From positions 248,001-312,000 of the IMG/VR virus record IMGVR_UViG_3300023184_000025: a DNA stretch of 64,000 nucleotides; one strand, 5' to 3'. Both the position numbers and the translations under genes were made by a program. This document shows, one piece after another, positions 2-28,868 of the stretch (within the stretch, counting starts at the first letter, position 1; each line of letters begins with the position of its first letter). The notes under the pieces are model-generated. The model was not told where the DNA came from and did no database searches. It saw only the letters and a program-made list of their open reading frames with translations.

Positions 2-559
2 AACACTGATGGTCGAGATGAGAGTCTTGTTGAGTTTTGCTTTGAACCCAATTATTTTGCCATGTACGATTGTTACAGTACCACCTATCCAAACGGAACG
101 TCGTTTCAGGCCTGGCGAGCAGGATTTAGAGAAGGCGTCAAGATGTGCCTGGACAAAGGTCATAAACCATCAGTGGCTGAATTTAGAGATCGTGTACATA
201 AACGTAATTTTGATCATCTTACAATTTGGCATAATGTAGGAACCGATGCTGAAAACGGCGCCTGGGCCATTGCTGGCAGTAGAATGGGTACTTACATGAC
301 TATGCTAACTGATTGGGATTATCGGCTAGTTCAAAATTTTGATGCGTTAGCAACCTTGTGGGATACTGTTAAAGACCACACTCCGGAAATTGTGTTTGAT
401 AGAATTGCCAACGAATTAAATCAACAATTAGATTTACCTGTTATTGTTTTGGGTCGAGAAGAAAGTGAATTTTTTAAACATCATTACCTAAGCAATTGGC
501 ACAATCGCGGCGTTATGGTACGAGAAATTGATGTTATTCGAAGTCAAGAAGGCTGGTAA
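2..559 (+). CDS. C-terminal part of a phage glycosyltransferase-like protein (5' truncated by window edge); paralog of 19799-21430 C-terminus
   Basis: Frame is open from base 2; FQAWRAGFREGVKM resembles YQTWRTAFREVSKL in 19799-21430. Confidence 0.55.
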   Translation, partial: NTDGRDESLVEFCFEPNYFAMYDCYSTTYPNGTSFQAWRAGFREGVKMCLDKGHKPSVAEFRDRVHKRNFDHLTIWHNVGTDAENGAWAIAGSRMGTYMTMLTDWDYRLVQNFDALATLWDTVKDHTPEIVFDRIANELNQQLDLPVIVLGREESEFFKHHYLSNWHNRGVMVREIDVIRSQEGW

Positions 560-1244
560 TAGCGTTGGCCAGGTCTTGATGTGCTTGCGGCCCGTAGTGA
601 AAGTTATCTCTTGCTTTATCTGATTGAGTTAATGGCGGGATTACATTATCTCCTAATACATCGTAGTCAACTGCCTGGTCATGCCAATTTGGGATGAAGC
701 TATGTACTAATTTGATATTTTTAGCTAACAAACATATTTTTTTAAAATTTGTAAACCAATTACTAAAGTTTTCTTCTGAAGAATAAAATGGCTCGCACTC
801 TGTCCGTTCGTCATCAAACCAGGCAGATTCAGGTCGCTCTCTGCGATGACTAAATGTATAATGTACAATTATAGCACTAGGGTGAAACAATGTTAGTAAC
901 TGTTGAAGTTTTCTTGCAATCCAGTCATTACTTGCTCCGTTTAAGCTAAAATTTAAAACTTGATGTGATAGATGTTGCTCAATGAGATCAGCATACCGTT
1001 TGTTATTATTAACACCTAGTCCTAGAGTAAAACTATCACCTAGTACCAGTATTGCATTAGGATTAAAGGTTGAAACATTGTGTGTTCTAAATCCTATTTC
1101 GTTAAATTGATAAGTTACAGATGGATGTTGCTTGAATACTTGACGATTTGGGCAATGTTCTAAACTGTCTAATCCTAGCTCTGTAGCATGCATGCCAGTA
1201 TAAAAAGGAATATTGATATATTGTTTGACAAGATCTGCATACAT
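534..1244 (-). CDS. SGNH/GDSL-like hydrolase/acyltransferase
   Basis: YQFNEIGFR, LGDSFT, GASN and C-terminal ARDNFH motifs; likely start MYADL at 1244. Confidence 0.65.
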   Translation of the reverse strand: MYADLVKQYINIPFYTGMHATELGLDSLEHCPNRQVFKQHPSVTYQFNEIGFRTHNVSTFNPNAILVLGDSFTLGLGVNNNKRYADLIEQHLSHQVLNFSLNGASNDWIARKLQQLLTLFHPSAIIVHYTFSHRRERPESAWFDDERTECEPFYSSEENFSNWFTNFKKICLLAKNIKLVHSFIPNWHDQAVDYDVLGDNVIPPLTQSDKARDNFHYGPQAHQDLANAITSLLDFE

Positions 1245-1258
1245 AAATATTTTTCTCA

Positions 1259-2350
1259 ATGAACGTTCTAATACTTACCCCCGATCGAGTAGGCTCTACT
1301 TTATTACAAAGATTGATAACAATCTACGCTAATGTCAATGAAAATTATGAGCCATTGACTATTAATTTACATGAGTTAACTAATGGCTTAGTGAGATACG
1401 ACCATGAAACATTTAATAGAAAAGTACTGGGCAAAAAAGCTGATGGTTGGGGATACCATCAAACTCTGCAGACTATTTCAGGATTAATTGACAATTGCGG
1501 CCATGATGTAGTAAGCCGTTTAGCTCACTATCATTTAAAAAATCGTAAAGATAACACAAGTGATCAATTGGCATTTTACAAATATCTCAATGAAAATTTT
1601 TATATTATTGCGGCCCGTCGAGAAAATTTATTTGAGCATGCAATGAGCTGGTGCATTGCGGTTGAGTCTAAAAAATTAAATGTATACTCGTTTGATGAAA
1701 AGTTTAAGACCTACAATGATATATTAAAAAATCCAGTTACCGTACAGGCTGAAATGATCAAGAAGTACCTAACACAGTACAGAGAATACATGGACTGGGT
1801 AGACAACCATTTTCAAGTCAACAGTTATTTTGAGTACGAACGTAATTTACCCAATATTGAAGAGTACATATTTAATTTAAGAGTTTTTCAAAAATATACA
1901 AAACCTCTTACCTGGGCCGACCGTTGGGACATATCCTGGAAGGATTGGAATCAAATGCATTACCTGTTAAGCTTAGTGCCGTTTGATCATAAATTTTCTC
2001 CTGACGAAACAAAATTTATGTCTGACAATATTGACTTATACACTCGGTGTAGGATAGACATACAAGACCTACAAGACCTAGGAGTGCTTGTGTCGGGAGT
2101 ACCTATCAAATTGCACACATTGCATCAGAAAACACAGTTAATTGCCAATGCTCCTGAATGTTTATTACACTATAATAATTGGGCACAACAAACCGCTGTG
2201 CCATATGCATTACCTTATACACCTGAACACATGACTCAAGTTGCAAAATTAGAACATGGTTTTTGGACTCAAGACAGTGGTAATCAACTGTCATACAACG
2301 ATATTAGTCACCAAAAATTACTTAACAGTGATCTAAAAGGATTTGAATGA
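1259..2350 (+). CDS. Sulfotransferase-like P-loop protein
   Basis: N-terminal TPDRVGSTLL, LHE, RRENLFEHAMSW resemble PAPS-binding motifs. Confidence 0.5.
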   Translation: MNVLILTPDRVGSTLLQRLITIYANVNENYEPLTINLHELTNGLVRYDHETFNRKVLGKKADGWGYHQTLQTISGLIDNCGHDVVSRLAHYHLKNRKDNTSDQLAFYKYLNENFYIIAARRENLFEHAMSWCIAVESKKLNVYSFDEKFKTYNDILKNPVTVQAEMIKKYLTQYREYMDWVDNHFQVNSYFEYERNLPNIEEYIFNLRVFQKYTKPLTWADRWDISWKDWNQMHYLLSLVPFDHKFSPDETKFMSDNIDLYTRCRIDIQDLQDLGVLVSGVPIKLHTLHQKTQLIANAPECLLHYNNWAQQTAVPYALPYTPEHMTQVAKLEHGFWTQDSGNQLSYNDISHQKLLNSDLKGFE

Positions 2351-4296
2351 TTATTGCATTTTATCCTGGAGCAGGCGGCAACAGGTATGCTCTAGCCCTA
2401 CAACAATCAATGGTGTTTGAGTCAAATCAAACGTATGATCATTTACTGAAGTCTCAAGATTTTGTCTATAGGTATTTAGAATCTGATACCATTGGTTTGA
2501 AAGATCAGGAATTAATACTCACACATTGTTTAAATGTTCCATTATTAAAATTGCATTTTCCTAATCAGACTGACATAGTAGTGATCATATCGGATCTTGA
2601 ATCTAGTTTAAAACGTGAATTTTATCTCGAAGACCAACACAGAGATAAAGACATGACAGACAAGGTTGAACATGCATTAGCACACATTAGCTTCCATTGT
2701 AGGTACTATAAACAATATCCAGTAAACTTAACCGGCGCTAGTTTAGTAATTGACATCAATAAAGACAACAGTGATTTTACCACAATGATGCGTAACGAAA
2801 TTAACAATATAGTTTGTGAAGAATACAACCAGGCCAGTAAACTTTATAATAAGTTACAACCACAAGATAGAGCAGACTTACCCGGGGATAAGATTGTTGA
2901 CGGTTTTAAATCTAAGTTTCTTGACGATGCTGAAAAAATGAGATTAGAACTAGATAAGTTTAGTCCTAGTTTGTGCTTGGCCAAATGGAAACAGGTTAGC
3001 CTGCACTTAGCAACAGGAATGAATAACAGTTGTTATCACCCGCCCTTGCATAAAATACCCATAGAAGAAATTGGACGTAATCCCGGAGCATTACACAATA
3101 CTCCATACAAGAAAGAACAACGTAAAATGATGCTCAACGGCGAGAGGCCCGCCGAATGTAGTTATTGTTGGACCATGGAAGATCTGGGCAAACTCAGTGA
3201 TAGACACTATCGCAGTGGGGAACCATGGGCCGCGATGGATTTTGGAAAAATTGTAAGTTCGGAGTGGAATGATGATTTTGTACCTAGTTATGTTGAAGTT
3301 AATTTTAATCATGCTTGTAATCTATCTTGTAGCTATTGCAGTCCACAATTTAGTAGTACTTGGCAGGCTGAAGTGGAACGCTCAGGTGGCTATCCTACTA
3401 CTACTATCCATAACGATCCTAGTTACTTCACTGGCAATAATCGACCTATACCCGCTAGTCATGAAAATCCTTATGTAGATGCTTTTTGGAAATGGTGGCC
3501 TACACTTTATCCGCAATTAAAACATTTCCGAATGACCGGTGGCGAGCCTTTGATGGATAAAAATACCTACAAGGTATTTGATTATGTATTAGCACTACCT
3601 AACCCTGAGTTGCACCTAAATGTAACCAGCAATTTCAGCGTAGAGCCGCAGTTATGGAACAAGTATTTTGATTATGTTAAAAAATTGTGCGACACTAACA
3701 TTGAACATTTTATGCAGTATGTTAGTTTAGATTCGGGTGTTTCTGAACATGCCGAATACATTCGCCATGGATTAAATTTTCATAGATTAAAAAGTAGAGT
3801 TAATCATTTCTTACACGATATTCCTAGCCGTAACAGTCTTACATTTATTATCACAATGAATAACCTCAGTGTGTTAGGACTAAAAAAACAACTTGAGTGG
3901 ATATTAGAACTACGAAAACAACATAGCAAGACATATCAACGTGTATGGTTTGACACACCATTACTCAGGCAGCCCACGTGGCAGAGCCTACAAATAATGC
4001 CTCCAGCGTATGCAGGCATACTTGAACGTACTGCTGACTGGATGGAACTTAATTTAGAAAACCCTAACGACCCATTTCACGGATTTAAAGACTACGAAGT
4101 ACAACGCCTTCGAAGAGACATTGCCTGGATGAAAGATGGACAGAAGTTGCAACAAGATTATGTTAATAAAAATCGTGCTGATTTCTATAGATTTTTTAAC
4201 GAACACGACGCTCGACGAGGAACAGATTTCTTAAAGACATTTCCAGAAATGTCAGATTGGTGGAAAGAATGCGAGTACCATGCTAGACAAACGTAA
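2347..4296 (+). CDS. Radical SAM enzyme (N-terminal Twitch/SPASM-like Cys cluster) fused to an extra N-terminal ~190-aa domain
   Basis: CNLSCSYC, TGGEP; upstream CLAKW..SCYH..CSYC; N-terminus IAFYPGAGGN. Confidence 0.85.
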   Translation: MIIAFYPGAGGNRYALALQQSMVFESNQTYDHLLKSQDFVYRYLESDTIGLKDQELILTHCLNVPLLKLHFPNQTDIVVIISDLESSLKREFYLEDQHRDKDMTDKVEHALAHISFHCRYYKQYPVNLTGASLVIDINKDNSDFTTMMRNEINNIVCEEYNQASKLYNKLQPQDRADLPGDKIVDGFKSKFLDDAEKMRLELDKFSPSLCLAKWKQVSLHLATGMNNSCYHPPLHKIPIEEIGRNPGALHNTPYKKEQRKMMLNGERPAECSYCWTMEDLGKLSDRHYRSGEPWAAMDFGKIVSSEWNDDFVPSYVEVNFNHACNLSCSYCSPQFSSTWQAEVERSGGYPTTTIHNDPSYFTGNNRPIPASHENPYVDAFWKWWPTLYPQLKHFRMTGGEPLMDKNTYKVFDYVLALPNPELHLNVTSNFSVEPQLWNKYFDYVKKLCDTNIEHFMQYVSLDSGVSEHAEYIRHGLNFHRLKSRVNHFLHDIPSRNSLTFIITMNNLSVLGLKKQLEWILELRKQHSKTYQRVWFDTPLLRQPTWQSLQIMPPAYAGILERTADWMELNLENPNDPFHGFKDYEVQRLRRDIAWMKDGQKLQQDYVNKNRADFYRFFNEHDARRGTDFLKTFPEMSDWWKECEYHARQT

Positions 4297-5422
4297 ACTT
4301 ATTCTAGATACATTTTGCGAAGTCTACGATCAACTACTACCCTGGGAAGATGAGTCTTTTTATGATTTTAGTAATCACACTATTGTTCCGGGTGCAATTT
4401 ATATTATAGGTCGAACACAATTTAATTTGAATAAAGAGAGAATTCGTGAGTTAGTTGAATCTGACACTATACGTGTTGTATTAAGCAATCCAGCTGAAGG
4501 CAGCGAAACGTTAAAAGCACATTGTGAGAGTGTGCATAACATTGCCGATCTTGTTGTGCAAGGGCGTATTTTATTAATTGGTGGTGGAGACATGGAGCCA
4601 GACTGGCCGTGTTTAGTCTATGATAGTTTCTTGCCCAAGATACATGACTATAAACAAAACCTAATAGAGATTAATCGGTCAGAGGCCTTGTACTCCGCGC
4701 CCAACAAGCCTTTTAAATTTTTGTTTTTAAATGGCCGCTTGAGAGGGCATAGAAAATTCCTAATAGAAAAACTTGATTTAATGGGACTGTTAGATCAAAG
4801 TCTGTGGACTAGTCTAGAATCTAGGCAAAGTATGTACTCAAATCTATGTGTGCCATTTAATGGACAGGATCTGATGTTTACTTTGAGAGAACCACACCTG
4901 TTGCCACCTAAATACGAAGTTGATCGTTATTGCAACAACATTGATCTAGTGCCCAAATTAGGCTTTATTAAACACAAGTTGTTTGATCAAGAATGGGGAG
5001 AAATCTATCTCAAAGCAGAACCCTATATTGATACGTATTTTAGTCTAGTTTCTGAAACAGTCTGTGATTATCCGTATAGTTTTAGAACTGAAAAAATTTG
5101 GAAACCTGTGGCCATTGGGCACCCGTGGATAGCGGCAGCCAATCGAGGATACTATCGAGACATGCGCAATCTGGGATTTCAAACATTTTCACATGTGATT
5201 GATGAAAGTTTTGATGAAATTGATAATACACAGGATAGACTCACACGTATTACACAAATAGTTGAAGATTTGTGTAAACAAGATCTTGATGAATTCCTTA
5301 AATCGTGTTATAATGTATGTAAATACAATCAACAACATCTGCTTGAAATGCGCCAAACTGTGCGTAAAGAATTTCCTAGACGATTCCTGCAATTTATTAA
5401 ACAAAGTCACTTTGATGAATGA
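4280..5422 (+). CDS. Glycosyltransferase-like protein (GT-B/GT10-like C-terminus)
   Basis: SLVSET..FRTEKIWKPVAIGHPW..GFQTF..DESFD; paralog family in window. Confidence 0.55.
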   Translation: MLDKRKLILDTFCEVYDQLLPWEDESFYDFSNHTIVPGAIYIIGRTQFNLNKERIRELVESDTIRVVLSNPAEGSETLKAHCESVHNIADLVVQGRILLIGGGDMEPDWPCLVYDSFLPKIHDYKQNLIEINRSEALYSAPNKPFKFLFLNGRLRGHRKFLIEKLDLMGLLDQSLWTSLESRQSMYSNLCVPFNGQDLMFTLREPHLLPPKYEVDRYCNNIDLVPKLGFIKHKLFDQEWGEIYLKAEPYIDTYFSLVSETVCDYPYSFRTEKIWKPVAIGHPWIAAANRGYYRDMRNLGFQTFSHVIDESFDEIDNTQDRLTRITQIVEDLCKQDLDEFLKSCYNVCKYNQQHLLEMRQTVRKEFPRRFLQFIKQSHFDE

Positions 5423-6758
5423 TTTAGAATTCCGCCAACAAATATTAGATACCAAAAGTTCTAGCTTCTGTGCGGCCAAATGGTACAATGCTACTATATG
5501 GCTAGGATCAGGCCAAACGACTAGCTGTCATCATCCGCCGGCACACGCTATTGATGTAGATGATATTAAACGCAACCCATCAGCGTTACATAACACACAG
5601 AGAAAAAAAGCCGATAGAGAAATGATGCAGAAAGGTGAGCGTCCTAGCGGTTGTGAATACTGCTGGAAAATTGAAGACATGGGCCGTGATGCTATTTCGG
5701 ACCGTGTGTACAAATCTCGAATATATCCTATAGAGGCATTACATGAAGCTTTCAATACCCCTGTCCATGAAGACGTTAATCTCAAAACTCTCGAAATTGC
5801 ATTCGATCGCACTTGCCAATTTGCTTGTAGTTATTGTAACCCTGCTTTCAGTAGCACATGGGTTAATGACATCAAAAAGCACGGCGCCTATACCGGCCTG
5901 GTGTCTGATGGGCGCAACCACTTTACTCATACTCACGATAGTTCTCAACTATACACGTTTAATCAAGCCAATCCTTACGTGGATGCGTTCTTTAAATGGT
6001 GGGAAACAGACCTACACCAAACACTACAAGAACTAAGAATCACTGGTGGCGAACCGTTGATGTCGGGTTATACTTGGAAATTGATTGAATGGTTCAAAAC
6101 AAACCAAGGTAAATCAACAACCAAGTTAGCTATCAACAGCAATCTGGGATTTGAACCTAACAAGCTTCAAGAGTTTATTGATGCTATACACACACTTCCG
6201 CATGTGGATCTATACACCAGCATGGAAGCAGTAGACACACAGGCCGAATATATTCGTGACGGACTTGACTATCAGCAATGGATCAACAATGTGCAATTGT
6301 TACTGGAGTCTGACTCCGTAAAGGCTGTGCATGTGATGTGTACCATTAACGCATTGTGCCTGGATAGTTTGCCTCGCTTGTTGTATCAATTGTTAGAATT
6401 CAAACAGATGTACGGCAGAGAGCGTGTGAATTTTACCTTGAATATACTGCGCTTCCCCAGCTTTCAATCACCATTGGTGCTGCCAGACCACCTACGTGCC
6501 CAGTGCAAGAACCAACTGATTGATTTCTTTGCACGTAATATCAACAACCCATATCTTCAAGAGCACGAAATCAATCATATACAACGATTGATTGACTATT
6601 TAGATATAGTTAAAACGCCGCACTCGGACACATTTGAAATGCCGGTGTTGCACAATGATTTCAAACAATTCTATTCGCAGTACGATGTTCGTAGATCGAA
6701 AGACTTTGTCAACACATTCCCCAATTTTAAAGAATGGTATGACTCAATACAAGTATAA
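5415..6758 (+). CDS. Radical SAM enzyme with N-terminal auxiliary Cys cluster
   Basis: CQFACSYC, TGGEP; CAAKW..SCHH..CEYC; start MNDLEF at 5415. Confidence 0.85.
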   Translation: MNDLEFRQQILDTKSSSFCAAKWYNATIWLGSGQTTSCHHPPAHAIDVDDIKRNPSALHNTQRKKADREMMQKGERPSGCEYCWKIEDMGRDAISDRVYKSRIYPIEALHEAFNTPVHEDVNLKTLEIAFDRTCQFACSYCNPAFSSTWVNDIKKHGAYTGLVSDGRNHFTHTHDSSQLYTFNQANPYVDAFFKWWETDLHQTLQELRITGGEPLMSGYTWKLIEWFKTNQGKSTTKLAINSNLGFEPNKLQEFIDAIHTLPHVDLYTSMEAVDTQAEYIRDGLDYQQWINNVQLLLESDSVKAVHVMCTINALCLDSLPRLLYQLLEFKQMYGRERVNFTLNILRFPSFQSPLVLPDHLRAQCKNQLIDFFARNINNPYLQEHEINHIQRLIDYLDIVKTPHSDTFEMPVLHNDFKQFYSQYDVRRSKDFVNTFPNFKEWYDSIQV

Positions 6759-11554: not shown

Positions 11555-11555
11555 T

Positions 11556-11657
11556 ATGAACTGGCTAAAAAATTTAATCAAACGAATTCGCATGGACATT
11601 CGTTATCGTAAAAAGCTAAACGAATTGCGTAACAAAAAGCCTTTTATATACTGGTAA
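11556..11657 (+). CDS. 33-aa basic peptide MNWLKNLIKRIRMDIRYRKKLNELRNKKPFIYW (copy A; not in ORF track)
   Basis: Translated by hand; TAATG overlap with next gene; paralog at 12175. Confidence 0.8.
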   Translation: MNWLKNLIKRIRMDIRYRKKLNELRNKKPFIYW

Positions 11658-12178: not shown

Positions 12179-12276
12179 ACTGGTTAAAAAACTTAATCAA
12201 TAGAATTAAACTTGAAATAAGATATAGAAAAAAACTCAAAGAGTTGCGTAAACGAGATCCATTTATCTACAAATGA
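12175..12276 (+). CDS. 33-aa basic peptide MNWLKNLINRIKLEIRYRKKLKELRKRDPFIYK (copy B; not in ORF track)
   Basis: ATGA overlaps with both neighbours; paralog of 11556. Confidence 0.85.
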   Translation: MNWLKNLINRIKLEIRYRKKLKELRKRDPFIYK

Positions 12277-22541: not shown

Positions 22542-23893
22542 GAGATTCCAAATTTTTCATCGTCTCGAGCTTGATTAATTAATCTACTTACCACATGGTC
22601 GAATGCATCTAAGTATCCAACATCAGGTGGTAACGGTCTTATTGTTTTTTTAGAGTTAACAAATTCTTGCACTACAGTCTCTATACTACTATTAACTGTA
22701 TTTCCAATTATGTATCTTTCAGCGCCCGGGCGATCTAAAAATCCACTTTCGTGATATACATATACATCTCCCTTGACATCAACTGCCACAGCCACTTGAG
22801 GGAAGCTAGTTGGCACCATTTCTTTCCAGGAAATCATTGACAATGGTCCTGAATTTTTTCCATGTACCAGCGGTTCTAGTGCATATCCAAAATCCCAATG
22901 TGTAGTAGGCCATTTATTTGTTTTAAAATCTTTAATCAAATCAAAAATATCAACAAGATGCACTCTTTCTTCGTCGCTGATGATGCGAACATTTTGGCTA
23001 AAGTCTTCCCGCAATGTTACAAAATCTACAGGACGCTTGGTCCGTGAATTAATATAGTCAATAATGTTTATTAACTTAACAACATCCTTTGAGTGCCCAG
23101 GAAGTATAATCCAGTTAACTCCCACACGAACGTTGTCCGTTGAATTGATATACTCAATGATATTTTCAACAATACGATGATAGCTTTCAGAATGGCGAGT
23201 CACTTTAAATGCACTTTGTTCATCAACCCCGTACAGACTAAAACGAACAGCATGAAGGTCTTTCATTCCAGGATGTTGTTCTATGTATTTCCGAGTCATC
23301 ATATAGCCGTTGGTGTACAATTGCATTTTGTATCCACGTTCGGCGCCGTAGGTAATAATGTTGCCTAGATACTTGTTAGTCAGCGGCTCTAGACCCCCAC
23401 TAATGCGAAAACGGTCATCCCAGAATGCATCAGTTTTAATATCTTGATCAATGATCTGTTTGAAAATATCAAATCCATACTGCTCAAATTTCTTTTCGTA
23501 TTTGGCCACAGGATTTCGACCGCAGAAGTTGCAGTAAAACATACAGCTCATACCAGTGTACAGTCCAATACGATTTGGGTACATATAACTATGATCAATG
23601 GCCGCATGCAATGATCCGTTTGTTAGCAATGGAGTAATTGTGTTGGTCCAATATTTTGTACCGCCACCGTGATACAATATGTAATTCTGAGCTGGTTGAT
23701 TTTCTCTGAGCCCACTAGATATTATTAGTAGTTCGTTGGCAGATATTGATAGCTGTTTTGCAATTTCTCTTTGACTAATAAACGGATCATCAGCCAGTAA
23801 CTTACACACCTGTTGAGACACTGAGTCTAGGTGTGTAATATCTGCATTTAGCGGAGTAGCGACGTCGCTGTGTGTGTAACCTAATCTTGTCAT
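22511..23893 (-). CDS. desII: DesII-like radical SAM NDP-4-amino-4,6-dideoxyhexose deaminase
   Basis: YWTNTITPL..YP..IGLYTGMSCMFYCNFC, SGGLEPLTN, LYTNG, SLYG, TLREDFS, DVKGDVYVY.ESGF, YLDAFDHVV match DesII as I recall it. Confidence 0.85.
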   Translation of the reverse strand: MTRLGYTHSDVATPLNADITHLDSVSQQVCKLLADDPFISQREIAKQLSISANELLIISSGLRENQPAQNYILYHGGGTKYWTNTITPLLTNGSLHAAIDHSYMYPNRIGLYTGMSCMFYCNFCGRNPVAKYEKKFEQYGFDIFKQIIDQDIKTDAFWDDRFRISGGLEPLTNKYLGNIITYGAERGYKMQLYTNGYMMTRKYIEQHPGMKDLHAVRFSLYGVDEQSAFKVTRHSESYHRIVENIIEYINSTDNVRVGVNWIILPGHSKDVVKLINIIDYINSRTKRPVDFVTLREDFSQNVRIISDEERVHLVDIFDLIKDFKTNKWPTTHWDFGYALEPLVHGKNSGPLSMISWKEMVPTSFPQVAVAVDVKGDVYVYHESGFLDRPGAERYIIGNTVNSSIETVVQEFVNSKKTIRPLPPDVGYLDAFDHVVSRLINQARDDEKFGISWNQGPVKCR

Positions 23894-24993
23894 TTAACTA
23901 TATCAATCAGTTGATCTGCAATGTATTCCACTTCTAAATCTGTCAGCTCGGGGTATATGGGTAAACTCAATACTCGCCTGGCTAATGCACTGGCTTTGGA
24001 AAACATCCCAGGGCCAACAATCGATTCATATAATGGAATTTCGTGCAACGGAAGTTCGTAGTGTACTTTTGTTTCAATTTTTCTAAGCATTAGTTCTTTT
24101 TTAACTTCATTACGATTGTCTACGTCAACAACAAACTTGTGATTACAATGGTCAACATAATTTGATTTGTCAGTTAATGTTCTGATGTTTTGTTTAGAAA
24201 AATGCTCAATCCAATATCCTGCAATTTTACTTCTACGTTGCTGCCATTGATCAATGTATTTTGTTTTAACCATCATAGTAGCACAGTCAACTTCACTCAT
24301 ACGACTATTACTGCCAGTCATGGTATGTCCAGGTTTTCCGTTGTCCCTCCAACCCAACGCATATTCTTGCAACTTTGAATCATCAGTGACCACTGCACCA
24401 CCATTGCCGTAACAACTTAGATTTTTCATTGGATCGAAACTAATAGCTGTTGCATGTCCTATTCGTCGACCACGATCACTCAGCCAATGTTGTGCGGCAT
24501 CTTCAATTATGGTATTTGCCATAAGTTCCCAACCGTTGCGTATAGACGCACCATACAGCCCAACTAACACAATAGCATTGTAATTAACTAATTCAGGTAT
24601 TGCATAGTCTCGATCCATTATTCCATATGCATCTGTATCAACAATAGTAACGTCCCATCCTGAACGCAAAAATGCATTGATGGTAGCTGGATATGTAATT
24701 GCCGGAACTAACACATGGCAACGGTGGCCCCAGTCTCTTGATATGTAGTACTGTGCAATTATTTCCAATGCCTGTGTTCCACTATGACAAGTTATGGCAT
24801 ATTTGCTATTGTTTTTCTTGGCTAACCATGTTTCGAATTCTTTGGTATAGATTCCATTCATGAGATTACCAGATCGTAATACACAATCTGTAGCATCTAG
24901 AATTTCTTCTTTGATGTTGTTATACTGTTTTTGGAGCCCAGTAAAGGGAATTGTTAAGCCAGCTGTAGTAATTTTGAAATCCTTCGTGAACAT
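23890..24993 (-). CDS. DegT/DnrJ/EryC1/StrS PLP sugar aminotransferase
   Basis: HSGTQAL, EDAAQ, SFDPMKNL..GNGG, NSRMSE. Confidence 0.92.
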   Translation of the reverse strand: MFTKDFKITTAGLTIPFTGLQKQYNNIKEEILDATDCVLRSGNLMNGIYTKEFETWLAKKNNSKYAITCHSGTQALEIIAQYYISRDWGHRCHVLVPAITYPATINAFLRSGWDVTIVDTDAYGIMDRDYAIPELVNYNAIVLVGLYGASIRNGWELMANTIIEDAAQHWLSDRGRRIGHATAISFDPMKNLSCYGNGGAVVTDDSKLQEYALGWRDNGKPGHTMTGSNSRMSEVDCATMMVKTKYIDQWQQRRSKIAGYWIEHFSKQNIRTLTDKSNYVDHCNHKFVVDVDNRNEVKKELMLRKIETKVHYELPLHEIPLYESIVGPGMFSKASALARRVLSLPIYPELTDLEVEYIADQLIDIVK

Positions 24994-25888
24994 CGACTTT
25001 GGGATCGTAACCTAACATGGCACGAGCCTGATTAATATTTAACGCACCGCGACTGGGGAAGTCTGCATCTTTATCCCTGCACTCAATCTCGCCGCTGCCT
25101 ACTATACTTACAATCATTTCTGCCGCTTGTAATAAAGACACAGAGTGTGATTTAGTAATGTTAAATGTGTGATTTTTAGCACCGGGCATGGTGGCCGCGG
25201 CAACAATGCCATCGGCGGCATCGTCAACATAGGTAAAGTCTAAGGTTTCGTTGGCACCGTTTACTTTTAATGTGCCACCACGCATGGCAGTAAGCATAAA
25301 TTTAGCAACCACACGATCTTCCACATCCAGGGGTCCATACACAGCACTGGGACGAATGATAACAAATTCCATGCCAGTTCGTCGAGCATAGTCTTTGACC
25401 AACCACTCCCCTGCCAGCTTCATAATACCATACTGTCCCTGAGGGTTGCAGACAGCATCTTCTTCAACTTGATCAGTAAAGTCGCCATATACCATTGAAC
25501 TACTAATGTAAACAAATCGACGAACACCGTGCTTTTTGGCACTCTCAAGCAGATTAATCAAGCCCTCCATCATAACACGACTGCCATTGGCTGGATTGGC
25601 ATTGACAACTTTTTGCCTTGGAAAACTTGCCATGTGTACAACCACTTCGGGTTGTTGCACCTGCATCACATAATCAACTGTGTCTGCAGTCTCAATAGAT
25701 GCATTATAAAAACCAGGATGGGGGATTTTTTTAATACGCTCTTCCATCAAATAGTCCAACTCACTTTGTGGAATAATACCATAGGTTGTTTTGTTATCAA
25801 TGATTGAGGTTGTATGGTCAAGATTTTGTAATCTTGCTATGACGTTGTGACCAATAAGGCCTAACCCACCTGTTACTAGTATTTTCAT
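24920..25888 (-). CDS. NAD-dependent NDP-sugar epimerase/dehydratase (extended SDR)
   Basis: TGGLGLIG, SSSMVYG, YGIMK, VYGP, DFTYVDD. Confidence 0.92.
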   Translation of the reverse strand: MKILVTGGLGLIGHNVIARLQNLDHTTSIIDNKTTYGIIPQSELDYLMEERIKKIPHPGFYNASIETADTVDYVMQVQQPEVVVHMASFPRQKVVNANPANGSRVMMEGLINLLESAKKHGVRRFVYISSSMVYGDFTDQVEEDAVCNPQGQYGIMKLAGEWLVKDYARRTGMEFVIIRPSAVYGPLDVEDRVVAKFMLTAMRGGTLKVNGANETLDFTYVDDAADGIVAAATMPGAKNHTFNITKSHSVSLLQAAEMIVSIVGSGEIECRDKDADFPSRGALNINQARAMLGYDPKVDVHEGFQNYYSWLNNSLYWAPKTV

Positions 25889-25889: not shown

Positions 25890-27071
25890 TTATATTGCCT
25901 TGTTTGTATTATCTATTTCTGGATTGTAGAACAATCTAGCCAGTGGAACAGCACTCACAGTACTGATCAAACTCATAATCACTACGGCAGCAAACATATT
26001 AACACTAATAATGTTGGCTGTCAATAACATGGTGACTAAAAAGATTTCCATTAGGCCTTTGTTTTGTAGCAAAGCAGTTTTGAAACAAACAACTCTGAGC
26101 CCTTGATCTCTGTAAGCCAACCAAACACCCACAAACTTAGTCCCGACAGCAATGATATACATTACAACTGCGCCTAGTAGGATAGTTTCTAAATCTAAGG
26201 TCCACGATGTCTTCAAACCAGCCCAAATAAAGAATACAGGCATCAACCAGACCATTTGCTGTTCAGCCATTCCTTCGTTCCATTCGATAGTGTGTCGTGG
26301 AGTAATCATACCTGCCAAGAACGCACCCAATACATAGTGCAATCCGGCCCAGTGACTAAAAGCCGCCATACACAATACCATGGCAACTGTTAAATTAGCA
26401 TAGGCATGTTTGCCAGCTAACTCTAAAATCTTTGGCCATGTATAATATAGAACTGTTAGTACTGCAAAGAAGATGCCTGAATAAAGAGCATACTTACCCA
26501 TACTTACAATTACAGCAACAGTGACCCACAAGACCAAATCGTCAAAGGTGACTAGAGCAAGTAATTTACGATACATGTCGCTACCGTACAATCCAACTTC
26601 TTTACAAGCTATGACCAACATCGGCATAGCAGTAATACAGGTAGCCACACCCATGCCCCAGGCATACTGCCAGAAAGGTCGTTCGGTAGTGTGCCAAACA
26701 GGATTGTCAAAGAACAACATGAAAGCACCACCGGCTAACAGGATGGGCACAATGATCACATTGAACGCTTGGCCCCAAATCTTGTTACCTTCTTGTGCTA
26801 TAACTTCTTTGGGTTTAAGTTCGATGCCAGCAATAAAGGCAAAGATTGAAATTGCTAAAATTTGAATAGCATCTAATCCTGTTTTGATTGGCGTAGTAAA
26901 TATTGTGCTAAACAGTTCGGGATAAAACTGTCCCAATGCACTTGGTCCCATGCAGATACCAAAGGCAATCTGCGCCATTGGTAACGGAATCCACTTTTCT
27001 AAACGTGTAATTTTTAAAATTAGCCACGGTACAAATACCATTGCGGCTATAATGAATAGTAAATTTCCCAT
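25890..27071 (-). CDS. Cation:proton antiporter (CPA2 family)
   Basis: Highly hydrophobic; ITAMPML, TFDD, LGAFLAG, PVFF..AGL, KG. Confidence 0.85.
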   Translation of the reverse strand: MGNLLFIIAAMVFVPWLILKITRLEKWIPLPMAQIAFGICMGPSALGQFYPELFSTIFTTPIKTGLDAIQILAISIFAFIAGIELKPKEVIAQEGNKIWGQAFNVIIVPILLAGGAFMLFFDNPVWHTTERPFWQYAWGMGVATCITAMPMLVIACKEVGLYGSDMYRKLLALVTFDDLVLWVTVAVIVSMGKYALYSGIFFAVLTVLYYTWPKILELAGKHAYANLTVAMVLCMAAFSHWAGLHYVLGAFLAGMITPRHTIEWNEGMAEQQMVWLMPVFFIWAGLKTSWTLDLETILLGAVVMYIIAVGTKFVGVWLAYRDQGLRVVCFKTALLQNKGLMEIFLVTMLLTANIISVNMFAAVVIMSLISTVSAVPLARLFYNPEIDNTNKAI

Positions 27072-27072
27072 A

Positions 27073-27333
27073 TTATTTCCCTTGTGTTTTTATCCAGAGT
27101 TCGTAGTAAGGGTCAAATCTCCAGTCCTGCGGCGGATCAAGCGGATCAAACTTCCAGGGATGTGTTTCTGGAGTTTCTGCAGGTATTGGAAATCTTTTTT
27201 GATAGCTAGAAAGAATATAGTCTCGAATCTGCTGATTACTGTATTGATCAGCGTACATTCCATCCACCAAAGGCTCAGGACTTTCAATTGATTTGAAAAA
27301 CCTAAAGATATTTATCCCCATCTGAGTTTCCAA
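27073..27333 (-). CDS. Hypothetical protein
   Basis: ORF in operon; TPETHPWKFDPLDPP. Confidence 0.55.
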   Translation of the reverse strand: METQMGINIFRFFKSIESPEPLVDGMYADQYSNQQIRDYILSSYQKRFPIPAETPETHPWKFDPLDPPQDWRFDPYYELWIKTQGK

Positions 27334-27641
27334 TAAGTTTCGCTTTGCTCGCTGAGTCTGGCTATAATACGATACAAGTGCCCATAACTAGAAATATCTG
27401 CTTGACGAATCCAGTAAGGTTTGTCCACAGCATGTTCCATGATAAACTTACCAGCGTCTGATTCCTGCCACTCATATATAGGTTGTGCCACATACAAATC
27501 AGGATCTTCTACATCGCCCATGCGGATCTCGTGTACACATACATCACGAAACTTTACAGCCCGATCTCTAATGATTTTAACCTGTTCGGGTTGCCATTGC
27601 TTGTATTCTGATTTGTGATCATAGATATCCGACATCGTCAT
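27312..27641 (-). CDS. Hypothetical phage protein (ends YWKLRWG; member of small paralog family)
   Basis: GDVEDPDLY motif; C-terminal family motif. Confidence 0.65.
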   Translation of the reverse strand: MTMSDIYDHKSEYKQWQPEQVKIIRDRAVKFRDVCVHEIRMGDVEDPDLYVAQPIYEWQESDAGKFIMEHAVDKPYWIRQADISSYGHLYRIIARLSEQSETYWKLRWG

Positions 27642-27659
27642 ATTATAACAAGTTTTTAT

Positions 27660-28868
27660 TTAAAGAGCAATGGCAGTAGCTAGTTCTGGAAAAGTATCTT
27701 TGAAATTTTCATTACGTATGACATCTAATGCTTGACTAATAGATAAAAATTTGTCCCAGGCATTTGAGTCAGCAGGTTGATTTATTACATTGATAATATC
27801 GTTGAATTCGGGATCAGTTTGTAATTTTGCAATGACCTTTTCTTTTATTTTATTGGGCATATTTTTAATAAAAAGATGATCTGGATTAACCAACAAATTC
27901 CAAAAAGGAGATTGTGGTAACAGTTTTGTTATCTCTTGTTTTATTTCTGGCAGACTGAATACATTAAACACATTAACTGTGGTAATACAATCAATAAAAA
28001 ATTTGGTGTTTTTTTCTTTAAAATATTTCTGCCATAGTAAAATATTATCAACAACGTCTTTGTATTTGATCCCATGGCGAATATATTCAAATTGTTTATC
28101 AATGCCGTCGATACTTACACCAATTTCAACTTCATTGAATTCATGTATTCTGGGAACTTTGTCAATGAGATTAACACTACCATTGGTGTTGATATATAAA
28201 TTTAATTGTTTGCTATGTCCATTTTCTGCAATTCGATCTAGTAGACCCAGCACTTTTTTATTGTATAACGGCTCGCCACCAAACAACTCTAGTCTTTTTA
28301 AATTTTTAGATAATTCATATATTTCGTCAAGTTGTTCCGTGCTCCAATTTTTTTCTGATACATTGATTGCATAGTGCCCTGGACCTATTGCCTGAGCTAA
28401 CTTATTGGCATCTTCGACCCAGCGACTACTATCTCCTGGATGGCACACACGACATTTAGCATTGCACACATTGCCATTTTTAATAGTTAGTATTTTAGGA
28501 CCTTTTAGATATTCTTTTTGTGCCAGTCCTTCTATCATTTCTTGTACAATGGTAGAATTATTAATAACAGAATAATCGCTGGTTTTGGTTTGAGAATTGT
28601 ATAATCTCAAACGGAGACTTTGTTTGTTGTTGTCTTCTTCATGCCAACATCGTTGACACATGTCGGGTCGTTGGTTATTCAAAAATTGATGTCTTAATGA
28701 CTCTAGATCTGCACTGGCCCATCGTTGCTGAATGGTACCATAATCTTGTGTCCAAGTGGTGCCACCTAGATACGGACACGGACTAAATGATTTCGTGGGA
28801 TGAGTTGTTAACTGTAAGAAAGGTGCTACACAAAAATTTTGTGGTAAGTTAAACATCTGTGTTGGCAA
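27660..28868 (-). CDS. Radical SAM/Twitch enzyme
   Basis: CVAPF..PC..CQRC, CNAKCRVC, FGGEP. Confidence 0.88.
   Translation of the reverse strand: MPTQMFNLPQNFCVAPFLQLTTHPTKSFSPCPYLGGTTWTQDYGTIQQRWASADLESLRHQFLNNQRPDMCQRCWHEEDNNKQSLRLRLYNSQTKTSDYSVINNSTIVQEMIEGLAQKEYLKGPKILTIKNGNVCNAKCRVCHPGDSSRWVEDANKLAQAIGPGHYAINVSEKNWSTEQLDEIYELSKNLKRLELFGGEPLYNKKVLGLLDRIAENGHSKQLNLYINTNGSVNLIDKVPRIHEFNEVEIGVSIDGIDKQFEYIRHGIKYKDVVDNILLWQKYFKEKNTKFFIDCITTVNVFNVFSLPEIKQEITKLLPQSPFWNLLVNPDHLFIKNMPNKIKEKVIAKLQTDPEFNDIINVINQPADSNAWDKFLSISQALDVIRNENFKDTFPELATAIAL

What the first reader, a model, noticed from the sequence alone, without database searches (positions are those of the whole stretch)
2..28868. ~29-kb secondary-metabolite-like tailoring island in a phage
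Seen: seven radical SAMs, a carbamoyltransferase, an amidinotransferase, an aryl-CoA ligase, a halogenase-like flavoprotein, two aminotransferases, an SDR, several GT-like, SGNH-like and sulfotransferase-like ORFs and a CPA2 antiporter, mostly translationally coupled. Established: amidinotransferase plus carbamoyltransferase plus DegT enzymes typify aminoglycoside-type clusters, amidinotransferase/carbamoyltransferase/sulfotransferase/GDSL genes co-occur in the saxitoxin cluster, and CPA2 antiporters often accompany halogenases. Inference: the product is a heavily decorated glycan on the virion, host surface or DNA, or a diffusible small molecule. The target cannot be read from sequence.
Basis: partly seen in the sequence, partly recalled or inferred. 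Interest (0 to 1): 0.72.

Follow-up and report, generated by a model that had tools for sequence, protein, structure and literature searches.

The report
Conserved phage glycan-tailoring locus with peptide
A giant lake phage carries, next to its tail-fibre genes, a 30-kb block of sugar-building and sugar-decorating enzymes (seven radical SAM enzymes among them) plus a tiny, almost invariant 33-residue peptide; the block is shared by hundreds of related uncultured phages and its product is still unknown.

Summary
There are seven radical SAM genes: six of NCBIfam 'N-terminal twitch' type and one DesII-like. The carbamoyltransferase, amidinotransferase, benzoate-CoA-ligase-like enzyme, Trp-halogenase-family flavoprotein, two DegT aminotransferases, SDR and CPA2 antiporter are also present, and nearly all junctions overlap. 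Only 'sulfotransferase-like' found no support.

The contig is a 345-kb IMG/VR jumbo phage. It is not a one-off island. Its core recurs in the same order in over 100 viral contigs at 60-85 % identity, continues at least 3.6 kb upstream of the window, and directly follows tail-fibre-like genes. The core is g01, five tandem rSAMs, g05, g10, a 33-aa ORF, the carbamoyltransferase, the amidinotransferase and g16-g18.

The CoA ligase plus halogenase, DesII plus DegT, SGNH plus g03, g11, the CPA2 antiporter and the seventh rSAM are swappable cassettes.

g05, g16 and g17 are one GT-B-like family. g10 has no known fold. The unannotated 33-aa peptide is under strong purifying selection, sits before the carbamoyltransferase, and also occurs in cultured Ralstonia phage RsoM2USA.

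Best reading: a cytoplasmic glycoconjugate assembly and tailoring locus, acceptor unresolved. Aminoglycoside or saxitoxin kinship is not supported.

The parts
1..559 (+). g01: 3' part of a 308-aa gene that starts 367 nt upstream of the window. Its family is shared with the C-terminal half of g18. It has an invariant D-G-D-N motif and may be GT-A-like.
   Evidence: full ORF L220:9632-10558; hhalign 99.4 % to g18; invariant columns; 2 of 47 members weakly hit Glyco_tranf_2_3; syntenic in 114 viral stretches
534..1259 (-). g02: weak SGNH/GDSL-like hydrolase or acyl-esterase; a variable cassette
   Evidence: Pfam Lipase_GDSL 23.6 bits, at the cut-off; present in few of the loci sampled
1259..2350 (+). 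g03: 363-aa protein of unknown family; a variable cassette.
   Evidence: no hit; 1623 metagenomic clusters, none with a Pfam domain
2347..4296 (+). g04: N-terminal-twitch radical SAM (649 aa) with an extra 200-aa N-terminal domain. It follows g01 in most of the distant relatives as well as the close ones.
   Evidence: NF033640 315 bits; CX3CX2C at residue 324; synteny
4280..5422 (+). g05: GT-B-fold glycosyltransferase-like protein, paralogue of g16 and g17
   Evidence: AF2 pLDDT 90. Foldseek PDB: 17 of the top 20 hits are GT-B enzymes, best E 1.4e-3, prob 0.93. BFVD: giant-virus glycosyltransferases down to E 4e-6. hhalign 99.9 % to g16 and g17. 3279 clusters.
5415..6758 (+). g06: N-twitch radical SAM of the g04 type; 53 % identical orthologue in Ralstonia phage RsoM2USA
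   Evidence: NF033640 307 bits
6739..8004 (+). g07: N-twitch radical SAM
   Evidence: NF033640 391 bits; Pfam SPASM E 3e-12 N-terminal to the rSAM core
8001..9206 (+). g08: N-twitch radical SAM
   Evidence: NF033640 339 bits; 142 relatives in IMG/VR at 60-66 % identity
9199..10497 (+). g09: N-twitch radical SAM
   Evidence: NF033640 291 bits
10466..11554 (+). g10: conserved 362-aa protein with no known fold. It has many invariant His, Glu and Asp residues, so it may be a metalloenzyme.
   Evidence: AF2 pLDDT 81.6, pTM 0.81; no PDB fold match, best E 0.5; 4979 clusters, all 'hypothetical'; invariant columns
11556..11657 (+). 33-aa peptide ORF, diverged copy, coupled to g10 and g11
11657..12178 (+). 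g11: 173-aa lineage-specific insert of unknown function between the two peptide copies
   Evidence: only one unique sequence among the loci; phrog_28122, unknown function, E 8e-7
12175..12276 (+). 33-aa basic peptide ORF (net charge +9), canonical copy. Its TGA stop overlaps the carbamoyltransferase ATG.
   Evidence: Residues 14-33 are almost invariant in 40 unique sequences while codons vary: Leu21 and Leu24 use all 6 codons and Pro29 all 4. Found in more than 120 viral contigs and 111 50 %-identity clusters. 118 of 128 copies lie directly upstream of the carbamoyltransferase.
12273..13769 (+). g12: O-carbamoyltransferase of the NodU/CmcH/TobZ family
   Evidence: Pfam Carbam_trans_N and Carbam_trans_C; 46 % identical to RsoM2USA ORF199
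13760..15247 (+). g13: aryl/acyl-CoA (AMP-forming) ligase, benzoate-CoA-ligase-like; a lineage-specific cassette together with g14
   Evidence: TIGR02262 362 bits against a cut-off of 375; only 4 unique sequences among the loci
15231..16469 (+). g14: flavin-dependent halogenase-family protein
   Evidence: PF04820 E 4.5e-91; GxGxxG present; canonical WxWxIP absent, replaced by W-I-W-D-T-G; 6 viral loci only
16471..17532 (-). g15: amidinotransferase-superfamily enzyme; part of the core
   Evidence: PDB AGAT, StrB1, SxtG, HsvA, E 7e-12 to 4e-8; 58 loci at 61-72 %
17525..18685 (-). g16: GT-B-like paralogue of g05
   Evidence: hhalign 99.9 %
18685..19800 (-). g17: GT-B-like paralogue of g05. Extra copies occur at variable positions in relatives.
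   Evidence: hhalign 99.9 %
19841..21430 (+). g18: 529-aa protein whose C-terminal half is homologous to g01
   Evidence: hhalign 99.4 %, residues 300-495
21423..22541 (-). g19: DegT/DnrJ/EryC1 sugar aminotransferase; a cassette together with g20
   Evidence: Pfam E 5e-97; few loci
22511..23893 (-). g20: DesII-like radical SAM (amino-deoxy-sugar deaminase type)
   Evidence: TIGR04426 341 bits, below the cut-off of 450; CX3CX2C at residue 117
23890..24993 (-). g21: second DegT-family aminotransferase; frequent in relatives
   Evidence: Pfam E 4.5e-58
24920..25888 (-). g22: NDP-sugar epimerase/4,6-dehydratase-type SDR
   Evidence: Pfam Epimerase E 1.4e-44; TIGR01181 117 bits, below its cut-off
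25890..27071 (-). g23: CPA2 cation:proton antiporter. It is the only membrane protein of the locus and is lineage-specific.
   Evidence: Pfam Na_H_Exchanger E 1.3e-21; 7 TM-like segments; absent from the other loci sampled
27073..27641 (-). g24 and g25: two small unknown ORFs (86 and 109 aa)
   Evidence: no family hits
27660..28868 (-). g26: seventh rSAM (N-twitch type), specific to this phage
   Evidence: NF033640 291 bits; found only in this phage's own two contigs
28849..29526 (-). ThyX thymidylate synthase: conserved backbone gene that marks the right border
   Evidence: TIGR02170 160 bits; follows the sugar arm directly in relatives L071 and L075

Best explanation
The region is the window's share of a locus of at least 33 kb in an uncultured freshwater jumbo myophage. 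The locus is cytoplasmic, assembles and tailors a glycoconjugate, and lies directly downstream of tail-fibre-like genes.

Proposed working:
1. An NDP-sugar, with activation left to the host, is converted to amino- and deoxy-amino sugars by the SDR, the two DegT aminotransferases and the DesII-like rSAM.
2. Three GT-B-like proteins (g05, g16, g17), and probably the g01/g18 family, string sugars onto a cytoplasmic acceptor.
3. The product is then decorated by O-carbamoylation (g12) and amidination with arginine as donor (g15).
4. In this lineage it is also decorated with a possibly halogenated aryl-acyl group (g13, g14) and by (de)acylation (SGNH).
5. The six N-twitch rSAMs carry out C-H-activating steps on the sugars or on the acceptor.

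The acceptor is most likely a virion protein made next door (tail fibre or capsid decoration), or the invariant 33-aa peptide that always travels with the carbamoyltransferase.

Shown: the enzyme families, the GT-B-like fold, synteny, cassette turnover, selection on the peptide, and the absence of membrane or export proteins.

Inferred: the order of steps, the substrates of the rSAMs, and the acceptor.
For: - Enzyme families.
- GT-B-like fold of g05 and homology to g16 and g17. BFVD hits include Mimivirus L138 and other giant-virus glycosyltransferases.
- The g01 family has an invariant D-G-D-N motif and weak GT2 hits.
- Position right after a 1358-aa protein with a baseplate-hub stretch and a 476-aa tail-fibre-like protein, syntenic across relatives.
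- A conserved core with variable numbers of rSAM, GT and tailoring cassettes, the pattern typical of surface-glycan loci.
- All proteins except CPA2 lack TM segments. No flippase, polymerase or ligase is encoded, so the acceptor is cytoplasmic.
- Literature: T4-like marine myophages carry tail-fibre 'host recognition clusters' with glycosyltransferases, LPS-sugar genes and rSAM cassettes (PMC7029224). Campylobacter phages CP220 and CPt10 carry a module of five rSAMs plus an amidinotransferase (PMC2853527). A cyanophage amidinotransferase was detected in the virion proteome (PMC12801897).
Against: - No glycan, acceptor or nucleotidyltransferase is identified.
- The GT-B assignment rests on modest Foldseek scores (PDB best E 1.4e-3, TM 0.3-0.4).
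- N-twitch rSAMs have no characterised member that I could find.
- SPASM/twitch rSAMs are best known as peptide maturases.
- The RsoM2USA mini-module has the rSAM, peptide, SGNH-like genes and carbamoyltransferase but no detectable GT-B-like gene. The peptide, rSAM and carbamoyltransferase unit may therefore work without glycosyltransfer.
- ThyX sits at the right border.
- The other 281 kb of the contig were not searched for base-modifying enzymes.
Confidence: 0.45

Rival explanations
1. Peptide-centred pathway. The 33-aa basic peptide is a ribosomal precursor or scaffold (RiPP-like or cofactor-like, as in PQQ or mycofactocin). The twitch rSAMs modify it near its invariant C-terminal D-P-F-I-Y-K. 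It is then carbamoylated, amidinated and possibly glycosylated.
For: - The peptide is real and under strong purifying selection.
- It is present in more than 120 viral contigs and 111 diverged clusters that keep the C-terminal motif.
- It is always translationally coupled inside the enzyme operon.
- It persists with an rSAM and the carbamoyltransferase in the GT-less RsoM2USA module.
- It is the only strongly basic product (+9) among acidic enzymes.
- SPASM/twitch rSAMs are classic peptide maturases. NCBIfam gives weak side hits to cyclophane, sactipeptide and ranthipeptide maturases.
Against: - No RRE/PqqD-like domain, leader peptidase or exporter was found by Pfam or NCBIfam.
- The twitch domain is N-terminal, unlike in known maturases.
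- The peptide tracks the carbamoyltransferase, not the number of rSAMs.
- The whole peptide is conserved, with no variable core.
- The maturase hits are far below their cut-offs.
Confidence: 0.2
2. Nucleic-acid hypermodification. The locus builds a sugar, carbamoyl or amidino adduct on phage DNA bases, or on the phage's many tRNAs, to evade host nucleases. The basic peptide would be a nucleic-acid-binding helper.
For: - Phage GT-A and GT-B enzymes do hypermodify DNA with diverse glycans (bioRxiv 10.1101/2023.12.21.572611).
- ThyX abuts the locus.
- The carbamoyltransferase fold is shared with Kae1/TsaD-type tRNA enzymes (general knowledge).
- All proteins are cytoplasmic.
- The peptide has net charge +9.
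- The phage encodes 28 tRNAs.
Against: - No hydroxymethylase, 5-hmdU kinase, DpdA, TET/JBP-like or methyltransferase gene lies in or beside the locus.
- The g05 model did not retrieve T4 beta-glucosyltransferase among its top 50 PDB hits, whereas published DNA GT-B enzymes do so at E 1e-5 to 1e-7.
- The locus lies among tail-fibre genes, not replication genes.
Confidence: 0.12
3. Remodelling of the host envelope. The enzymes alter host LPS, capsule or peptidoglycan during infection, for example to block superinfection, as proposed for glycosyltransferases of pelagimyophages.
For: - The literature proposes this for the analogous clusters (PMC7029224).
- SGNH and O-carbamoyl chemistry is typical of surface polysaccharides.
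- The cassette diversity fits.
Against: - No membrane-bound initiating transferase, flippase, polymerase or ligase is encoded. Every enzyme is soluble.
- The locus has a large conserved core across phages that presumably infect different hosts.
- The phage appears to be lytic and large, so the pathway would depend wholly on host export machinery.
Confidence: 0.1
4. A diffusible small-molecule natural product (aminoglycoside-like or guanidine-alkaloid-like).
For: - The locus combines an amidinotransferase, carbamoyltransferase, DegT enzymes, rSAMs, a CoA ligase and a halogenase.
- SxtG and StrB1 are among the PDB hits of g15.
- A CPA2 transporter is present.
Against: - No scaffold-forming enzyme was detected: no cyclitol synthase, SxtA-type enzyme, PKS or NRPS.
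- The halogenase, CoA ligase and CPA2 are lineage-specific add-ons, not core.
- No exporter belongs to the core.
- The similarity is only at superfamily level.
Confidence: 0.08

Closest known systems
Tail-fibre 'host recognition cluster' of T4-like marine myophages (pelagimyophages and cyanomyophages; PMC7029224)
   Same: A large region beside tail-fibre genes holds glycosyltransferases, deoxy-sugar enzymes and radical SAM cassettes that are gained and lost between close relatives. Its function is unproven.
   Different: - This locus has a strongly conserved syntenic core (60-85 % identity) rather than a non-syntenic hypervariable island.
- The phage is a 345-kb jumbo phage nearer to PA5oct, RsoM2USA and XacN1-type phages.
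- The locus carries the 33-aa peptide, which I did not find next to cyanophage or pelagiphage carbamoyltransferases.
Five-rSAM plus glycine-amidinotransferase module of Campylobacter phages CP220 and CPt10 (PMC2853527)
   Same: Five radical SAM genes sit together with an amidinotransferase in a 10-12-gene replaceable module of a large myophage. The function is unknown.
   Different: No sequence match to g08 or g15 was found in those phages at E 1e-5. Whether they have GT-B-like genes, a carbamoyltransferase or the peptide was not tested.
Ralstonia jumbo phage RsoM2USA, ORF199-203 (MG752970)
   Same: It has a g06 orthologue (53 %) and a carbamoyltransferase orthologue (46 %). It also has an unannotated peptide ORF ending Q-D-P-F-I-Y-K, coupled to the next gene.
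   Different: It is a mini-version with one rSAM and SGNH-like genes. No GT-B-like, amidinotransferase or sugar arm was detected. All genes are annotated as hypothetical, and the paper does not mention them.
Virus-encoded virion glycosylation clusters (Mimivirus fibril glycans; mycobacteriophage capsid and tail glycans)
   Same: These viruses encode their own rare-sugar pathways plus glycosyltransferases. The g05 model resembles giant-virus glycosyltransferases, including Mimivirus L138.
   Different: To my knowledge no radical SAM battery, carbamoyl or amidino tailoring, or peptide is known there. Virion attachment is not shown here.
Desosamine-type deoxy-amino-sugar pathway (4,6-dehydratase, DesI, DesII, DesV)
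   Same: The SDR, a DegT enzyme, a DesII-like rSAM and a second DegT enzyme lie in one minus-strand operon.
   Different: - DesII and the SDR both score below their equivalog cut-offs.
- There is no nucleotidyltransferase and no N,N-dimethyltransferase.
- The DesII and DegT1 pair is a lineage-specific cassette.

Membership tests
NCBIfam NF033640 N_Twi_rSAM (twitch domain-containing radical SAM) | Full-length HMM score above the curated cut-off (170 bits) | tested here: met
   Six proteins score 291-391 bits over model positions 1-398.
NCBIfam NF033640 N_Twi_rSAM | CX3CX2C SAM-cluster motif preceded by an N-terminal Cys-rich auxiliary (twitch/SPASM-like) domain | tested here: met
   CX3CX2C is present in all six, and four conserved N-terminal Cys align. 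Pfam SPASM hits lie N-terminal to the core in g07 and g08. Cluster binding itself is not testable here.
DesII (TIGR04426, dTDP-4-amino-4,6-dideoxy-D-glucose ammonia-lyase) | Equivalog HMM score of at least 450 bits | tested here: not met
   341 bits. It is DesII-like, not a confirmed DesII. Neighbouring DegT genes fit the pathway.
Flavin-dependent (tryptophan-type) halogenase | PF04820 domain and the GxGxxG flavin motif | tested here: met
   PF04820 scores 306 bits. GGGTAG lies at residue 12.
Flavin-dependent (tryptophan-type) halogenase | Canonical WxWxIP motif | tested here: not met
   The regular expression finds none. The nearest stretch reads W-I-W-D-T-G. Halogenating activity is therefore uncertain, and 'halogenase-family flavoprotein' is the safe name.
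Amidinotransferase (AGAT/StrB1/SxtG superfamily) | Sequence similarity over the catalytic domain, including the C-terminal catalytic Cys region | tested here: inconclusive
   PDB phmmer gives E 7e-12 to 4e-8, with the best-scoring stretch over the last 65 residues; three entries have a second matched stretch. There is no Pfam or NCBIfam hit at E 0.01. tblastn covers 86-98 % of the protein against amidinotransferase genes of marine viruses at 21-31 % identity.
NodU/CmcH/TobZ O-carbamoyltransferase | Both Carbam_trans_N (Kae1-like) and Carbam_trans_C (YrdC-like) domains | tested here: met
   E 7.8e-36 and 1.5e-47, both above their cut-offs. It is not an equivalog of NodU (130 bits against 1000).
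GT-B fold glycosyltransferase | Two-Rossmann-domain fold similar to solved GT-B enzymes | tested here: met
   The g05 model has pLDDT 90. Of the top 20 PDB hits, 17 are GT-B enzymes (E 1.4e-3 to 0.16, TM up to 0.41). BFVD gives named glycosyltransferases down to E 4e-6. g16 and g17 are linked by hhalign at 99.9 %. No CAZy family is assigned and donor binding was not tested.
Aminoglycoside-type biosynthetic cluster | A cyclitol-forming enzyme (2-deoxy-scyllo-inosose synthase or the myo-inositol route) and resistance or export genes | tested here: not met
   No such family appears among the Pfam or NCBIfam hits of any ORF from 1 to 30513.
Saxitoxin (sxt) cluster | An SxtA-type PKS-like starter enzyme plus the sxt-specific cyclases and oxygenases | tested here: not met
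   Only the superfamily-level amidinotransferase, carbamoyltransferase and SGNH resemblances exist. No SxtA-like protein was detected.
Radical-SAM RiPP cluster | A short precursor peptide encoded beside SPASM/twitch rSAM maturases | tested here: inconclusive
   A conserved 33-aa ORF is present, but it tracks the carbamoyltransferase rather than the rSAMs.
Radical-SAM RiPP cluster | An RRE/PqqD-like recognition domain, a leader peptidase and an exporter | tested here: not met
   None was detected by Pfam or NCBIfam in the locus. Structure-level detection of an RRE was not done for the rSAMs.
T4-like 'host recognition cluster' | Located among structural genes next to tail fibres, with GT, sugar and rSAM cassettes | tested here: inconclusive
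   Tail-fibre and baseplate-like proteins lie directly upstream. The flanking markers VrlC and gp14 were not examined, and the phage is not shown to be T4-like.

The most novel reading that the evidence does not exclude
The invariant 33-aa peptide is a ribosomally made scaffold or precursor. A battery of N-terminal-twitch radical SAM enzymes processes it, and it is then carbamoylated, amidinated and glycosylated. That would be a phage-encoded peptide-glycoconjugate (RiPP-like or cofactor-like) pathway present in thousands of freshwater phage genomes. It would also give the uncharacterised N_Twi rSAM family and the fold-less g10 family their first function.
Probability: 0.17. Interest if true: 0.85.

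Novelty: new variant of a known kind. Interest (0 to 1): 0.64.

Why it matters
Large aquatic phages are known to carry sugar-enzyme and radical SAM cassettes beside their tail fibres, but nobody has shown what these make. This locus differs from the hypervariable examples described so far.

- Its core is conserved gene for gene in hundreds of uncultured phages.
- Its protein families number thousands of sequence clusters that are all annotated 'hypothetical'.
- It contains a protein with no known fold.
- It contains an overlooked peptide that is more conserved than any enzyme around it.

A cut-down version sits unannotated in a cultured phage (RsoM2USA), so the question of what phage radical SAM batteries do becomes directly approachable. 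The answer bears on how abundant lake phages disguise or arm their particles or genomes. It also bears on the chemistry of an uncharacterised radical SAM subfamily.

Tried and rejected
- Near-identity DNA search of the locus against 50,697 phage records found nothing. The rest of the window matched only at tRNAs.
- Single-sequence PDB searches found nothing for g03, g05, g10, g16, g17 and g18. A profile PDB search for g05 also found nothing.
- PHROGs found nothing for 9 of the 10 unknown island proteins tested.
- A fold search of the confident g10 model found no match. The top hits were kinases at TM 0.1-0.17 and were rejected.
- Lead that u6 and u7, upstream of the window, are GT8/glycogenin-like: the only hit was glycogenin-2 at E 0.94, and none of 65 members hit a GT Pfam family. 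Not supported.
- Lead that the g01 family is GT-A: only 2 of 47 members hit weakly. Kept as 'possible'.
- Looked for the peptide beside the carbamoyltransferases of P-SSM2, HTVC008M, S-CAM8 and Stenotrophomonas phage CM1, and in the K566 and S-SCSM2R regions. None was found.
- Looked for the peptide in 185,579 species genomes. It occurs on only six contigs of five metagenome-assembled genomes, probably mis-binned phage DNA.
- Literature on N-terminal twitch rSAMs, on phage RiPPs and on RsoM2USA gave no functional data.
- The first look-up of g01 by exact sequence failed because the window cuts the gene.
- Two relatives' g10 coordinates from my own ORF picker gave one in-frame stop each and were dropped from the attempted g10 alignment. 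That alignment was not completed, and g10 was aligned from database homologues instead.
- One hhalign batch timed out and was rerun on a smaller set.
- The aminoglycoside and saxitoxin memberships were rejected for lack of scaffold enzymes.

Full report
**What the window is.** The window is bases 248,001-312,000 of JGI/IMG contig Ga0214919_10000007 (345,154 bp), which IMG/VR lists as UViG 3300023184_000025.
- It carries 28 tRNA genes and a permuted tmRNA.
- It also carries GroEL, a MoxR ATPase with a VWA/DUF2201 partner, ThyX and an exonuclease. The exonuclease is about 50 % identical to those of PA5oct-like Pseudomonas and Erwinia jumbo phages.
- No cultured phage is close at the DNA level.
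- Just upstream of the window lie a 1358-aa protein with a baseplate-hub-like stretch and a 476-aa protein with tail-fibre PHROG hits and a weak intramolecular-chaperone domain.

This is a jumbo phage. The tmRNA fits Rfam's betaproteobacterial model best (120 bits), which hints at the host.

**Observation check.** The listed genes exist where stated.
- Six of the seven radical SAM proteins are full-length members of NCBIfam NF033640, 'twitch domain-containing radical SAM protein' (291-391 bits, cut-off 170). Their Cys-rich auxiliary domain lies N-terminal to the CX3CX2C core.
- The six are deeply diverged paralogues (16-33 % identity), all with intact cluster motifs.
- The seventh is DesII-like but below the equivalog cut-off (341 against 450 bits).
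- The amidinotransferase is 16471-17532(-). Only comparison with solved structures found it.
- The halogenase-family protein has the flavin motif but not the canonical WxWxIP motif.
- Every junction of the plus-strand operon 1259-16469 overlaps or leaves at most 1 nt.
- 'Sulfotransferase-like' found no support.

**True extent.** The first ORF is cut by the window edge. It is a 308-aa gene (L220:9632-10558). Five further unknown genes (u4-u8) lie between it and the tail-fibre-like genes, and they are syntenic with it in relatives. On the right, ThyX (28849-29526) belongs to the conserved backbone.

**Not a one-off island.**
- A single rSAM (g08) retrieved 142 relatives in IMG/VR. The g01 fragment retrieved 114.
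- Mapping all island proteins onto those loci shows one gene order: u2/u4-u8, g01, g04, g05, g06, g07, g08, g09, g10, a small ORF, the carbamoyltransferase, then on the other strand the amidinotransferase, g16 and g17, then g18, and often DegT2 and the SDR. Identity is 60-85 %.
- The g10, g05 and g03 families hold 4979, 3279 and 1623 sequence clusters, all unnamed.
- Several elements are found in few lineages or only in this one: SGNH plus g03, g11, the CoA ligase plus halogenase (6 loci), DegT1 plus DesII, CPA2, and the seventh rSAM (this phage only).
- Even a 93-97 % identical relative differs by three cassettes.
- More distant relatives keep u4-u8, g01 and in most cases g04. They then carry variable numbers of g07-like rSAMs, g05-like genes and the carbamoyltransferase.
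- GC content does not set the region apart.

**The unknown proteins.**
- Profile-profile comparison joins g05, g16 and g17 into one family (99.9 %), g01 with the C-terminal half of g18 (99.4 %), and u6 with u7 (99.4 %).
- An AlphaFold model of g05 (pLDDT 90) retrieves mostly GT-B glycosyltransferases from the PDB, 17 of the top 20 hits: glycogen synthases, exostosin, BshA, GtfC/Gtf3 and trehalose-phosphate synthases. Scores are modest.
- From the viral structure library the same model retrieves giant-virus glycosyltransferases, including Mimivirus L138.
- g10 folds confidently (pLDDT 82, pTM 0.81) but matches no solved fold. Its invariant residues are rich in His, Glu and Asp.
- Apart from CPA2, no protein of the locus has a membrane segment. 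The chemistry is therefore cytoplasmic, and no lipid-linked export route is encoded.

**A missed element: the 33-aa peptide.**
- Between g10 and the carbamoyltransferase lie two 33-aa ORFs that flank g11 (11556-11657 and 12175-12276), each coupled to its neighbours by overlapping stop and start codons.
- In 40 unique sequences from relatives, residues 14-33 are almost invariant while synonymous codons vary freely. Both invariant Leu positions use all six codons and the invariant Pro uses all four. Selection therefore acts on the peptide, not on the DNA or RNA.
Among 185,579 species genomes it occurs on only six contigs of five metagenome-assembled genomes.
- An exhaustive protein search finds 111 diverged clusters. 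They keep an N-terminal amphipathic stretch, a Y-R-K-K centre and the C-terminal D-P-[F/Y]-x-Y-[K] end.
- It is tied to the carbamoyltransferase: 118 of 128 copies lie directly upstream of it, including in distant loci that lack g10.
- Inserted cassettes at this spot tend to bring a second copy, as in this window and in L069.
- It carries net charge +9, while all the enzymes around it are acidic or near neutral.

**Cultured relatives and literature.**
- Ralstonia jumbo phage RsoM2USA has a cut-down module: an SGNH-like gene, a g06 orthologue (53 %), ORF201, an unannotated peptide ORF with the same C-terminal motif, a second SGNH-like gene, and a carbamoyltransferase (46 %). Its paper does not discuss these genes.
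- Vibrio phage K566 has four N-twitch-like rSAMs in one cluster.
- Campylobacter phages CP220 and CPt10 were reported in 2010 to carry a replaceable module of five rSAMs plus a glycine amidinotransferase.
- A cyanophage paper lists amidinotransferases with DegT-type and rSAM genes, and found one amidinotransferase in the virion proteome.
- Pelagimyophage 'host recognition clusters' combine tail fibres, glycosyltransferases, sugar genes and rSAM cassettes.
- I found no functional study of N-terminal-twitch rSAMs.

**Most likely working.** I read the locus as a cytoplasmic glycoconjugate assembly and tailoring line.
1. The SDR, DegT and DesII-like enzymes make amino- and deoxy-amino sugars.
2. 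The GT-B-like trio, and perhaps g01 and g18, join them.
3. The carbamoyltransferase, amidinotransferase, SGNH enzymes and, in this lineage, an aryl-CoA ligase with a halogenase-family flavoprotein decorate the product.
4. The rSAM battery does C-H chemistry on sugars or on the acceptor.

Three things favour a virion protein as acceptor: the position beside the fibre genes, the glycan-locus-like cassette turnover and the lack of export genes. The peptide is the alternative acceptor or scaffold.

The enzyme families, the fold, the synteny and the selection are shown. Substrates, order of steps and acceptor are inferred. I give this reading 0.45.

Rivals:
- a peptide-centred RiPP-like pathway (0.20);
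- DNA or tRNA hypermodification (0.12);
- host-envelope remodelling (0.10);
- a diffusible metabolite (0.08).

**Comparison with known systems.**
- It works like the tail-fibre-adjacent sugar and rSAM regions of T4-like marine phages, and like virus-encoded virion-glycan clusters.
- It is not a member of aminoglycoside or saxitoxin clusters, because the scaffold enzymes are absent.
- It is not shown to be a RiPP cluster, because no recognition domain, peptidase or exporter was found.
- DesII, the 4,6-dehydratase and NodU identities fail their equivalog cut-offs and should be quoted as '-like'.

**Novelty and weight.** The kind of locus is known, but this version is new in four ways:
- a conserved core in hundreds of phages;
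- a battery of an uncharacterised rSAM subfamily;
- a protein with no known fold;
- a hyper-conserved, unannotated peptide with a cultured carrier.

I score interest at 0.64 and file it as a new variant of a known kind.

- I saw about 74 kb of the 345-kb contig, so base-modifying genes elsewhere are untested.
- Only two structures could be predicted.

Noticed in passing
window 39900-40269 (-): A permuted (two-piece type) tmRNA gene. ARAGORN reads the tag peptide as ANDEQFALAA. The best Rfam model is betaproteobacterial tmRNA (120 bits), a hint that the host is a freshwater betaproteobacterium.
   Followed up: partly
window 45608-52178 and 59751-59992 (-): 28 tRNA genes, all on the minus strand, with at least one gene for each of the 20 amino acids. 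Some are 85-90 % identical to tRNAs of other jumbo phages (XacN1, Hena1, FLC1-1B).
   Followed up: no
window 30786-33892 (-): A MoxR-type AAA ATPase (32792-33892) paired with a DUF2201 metallopeptidase/VWA protein (30786-32078). PHROGs labels the latter family 'HNH endonuclease', which looks like a mislabel.
   Followed up: no
window 56123-57742 (-): A phage-encoded GroEL chaperonin (phrog_5725, E 8e-175).
   Followed up: no
L301 about 15020-15137 (+) (Ralstonia phage RsoM2USA, MG752970): An unannotated short ORF that ends Q-D-P-F-I-Y-K. It lies between ORF201 and ORF200 and is homologous to the window's 33-aa peptide. The neighbouring rSAM and carbamoyltransferase are annotated only as hypothetical proteins.
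   Followed up: partly
L213 and L217 (NZ_JBBAKG010000003.1, 148 kb; NZ_JBBAKG010000001.1, 183 kb): Two long contigs of a 'Haliscomenobacter sp.' MAG carry the phage peptide and homologues of g17 and g18. They are probably phage contigs binned into a bacterial MAG. The same applies to the Legionellales, Lishizhenia and beta-proteobacterium MAG contigs.
   Followed up: no
L009/L010/L015 (IMGVR_UViG_3300043570_001980 and relatives): The 93-97 % identical sister lineage has two halogenase-family genes in tandem, one 94 % and one 44 % identical to g14. It lacks g02, g03 and g11. This shows cassette turnover between near-identical phages.
   Followed up: partly
L069 about 13530-14413 (+): A second example of a duplicated peptide ORF flanking an inserted gene, with a diverged copy upstream and a canonical copy next to the carbamoyltransferase, as in the window. 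The peptide gene may serve as the junction at which cassettes are exchanged.
   Followed up: no
window 2347-2950 (+): The first 200 residues of g04 form an extra domain that is absent from the other five N-twitch rSAMs. It begins with a Gly-rich loop. No family was assigned.
   Followed up: no
L220 7736-9305 (+), 0.7-2.3 kb upstream of the window: u6 and u7 are tandem paralogues (hhalign 99.4 %) with an invariant Asp-containing motif. The GT8/glycogenin-like lead was not supported (E 0.94; no Pfam hit in 65 members).
   Followed up: yes
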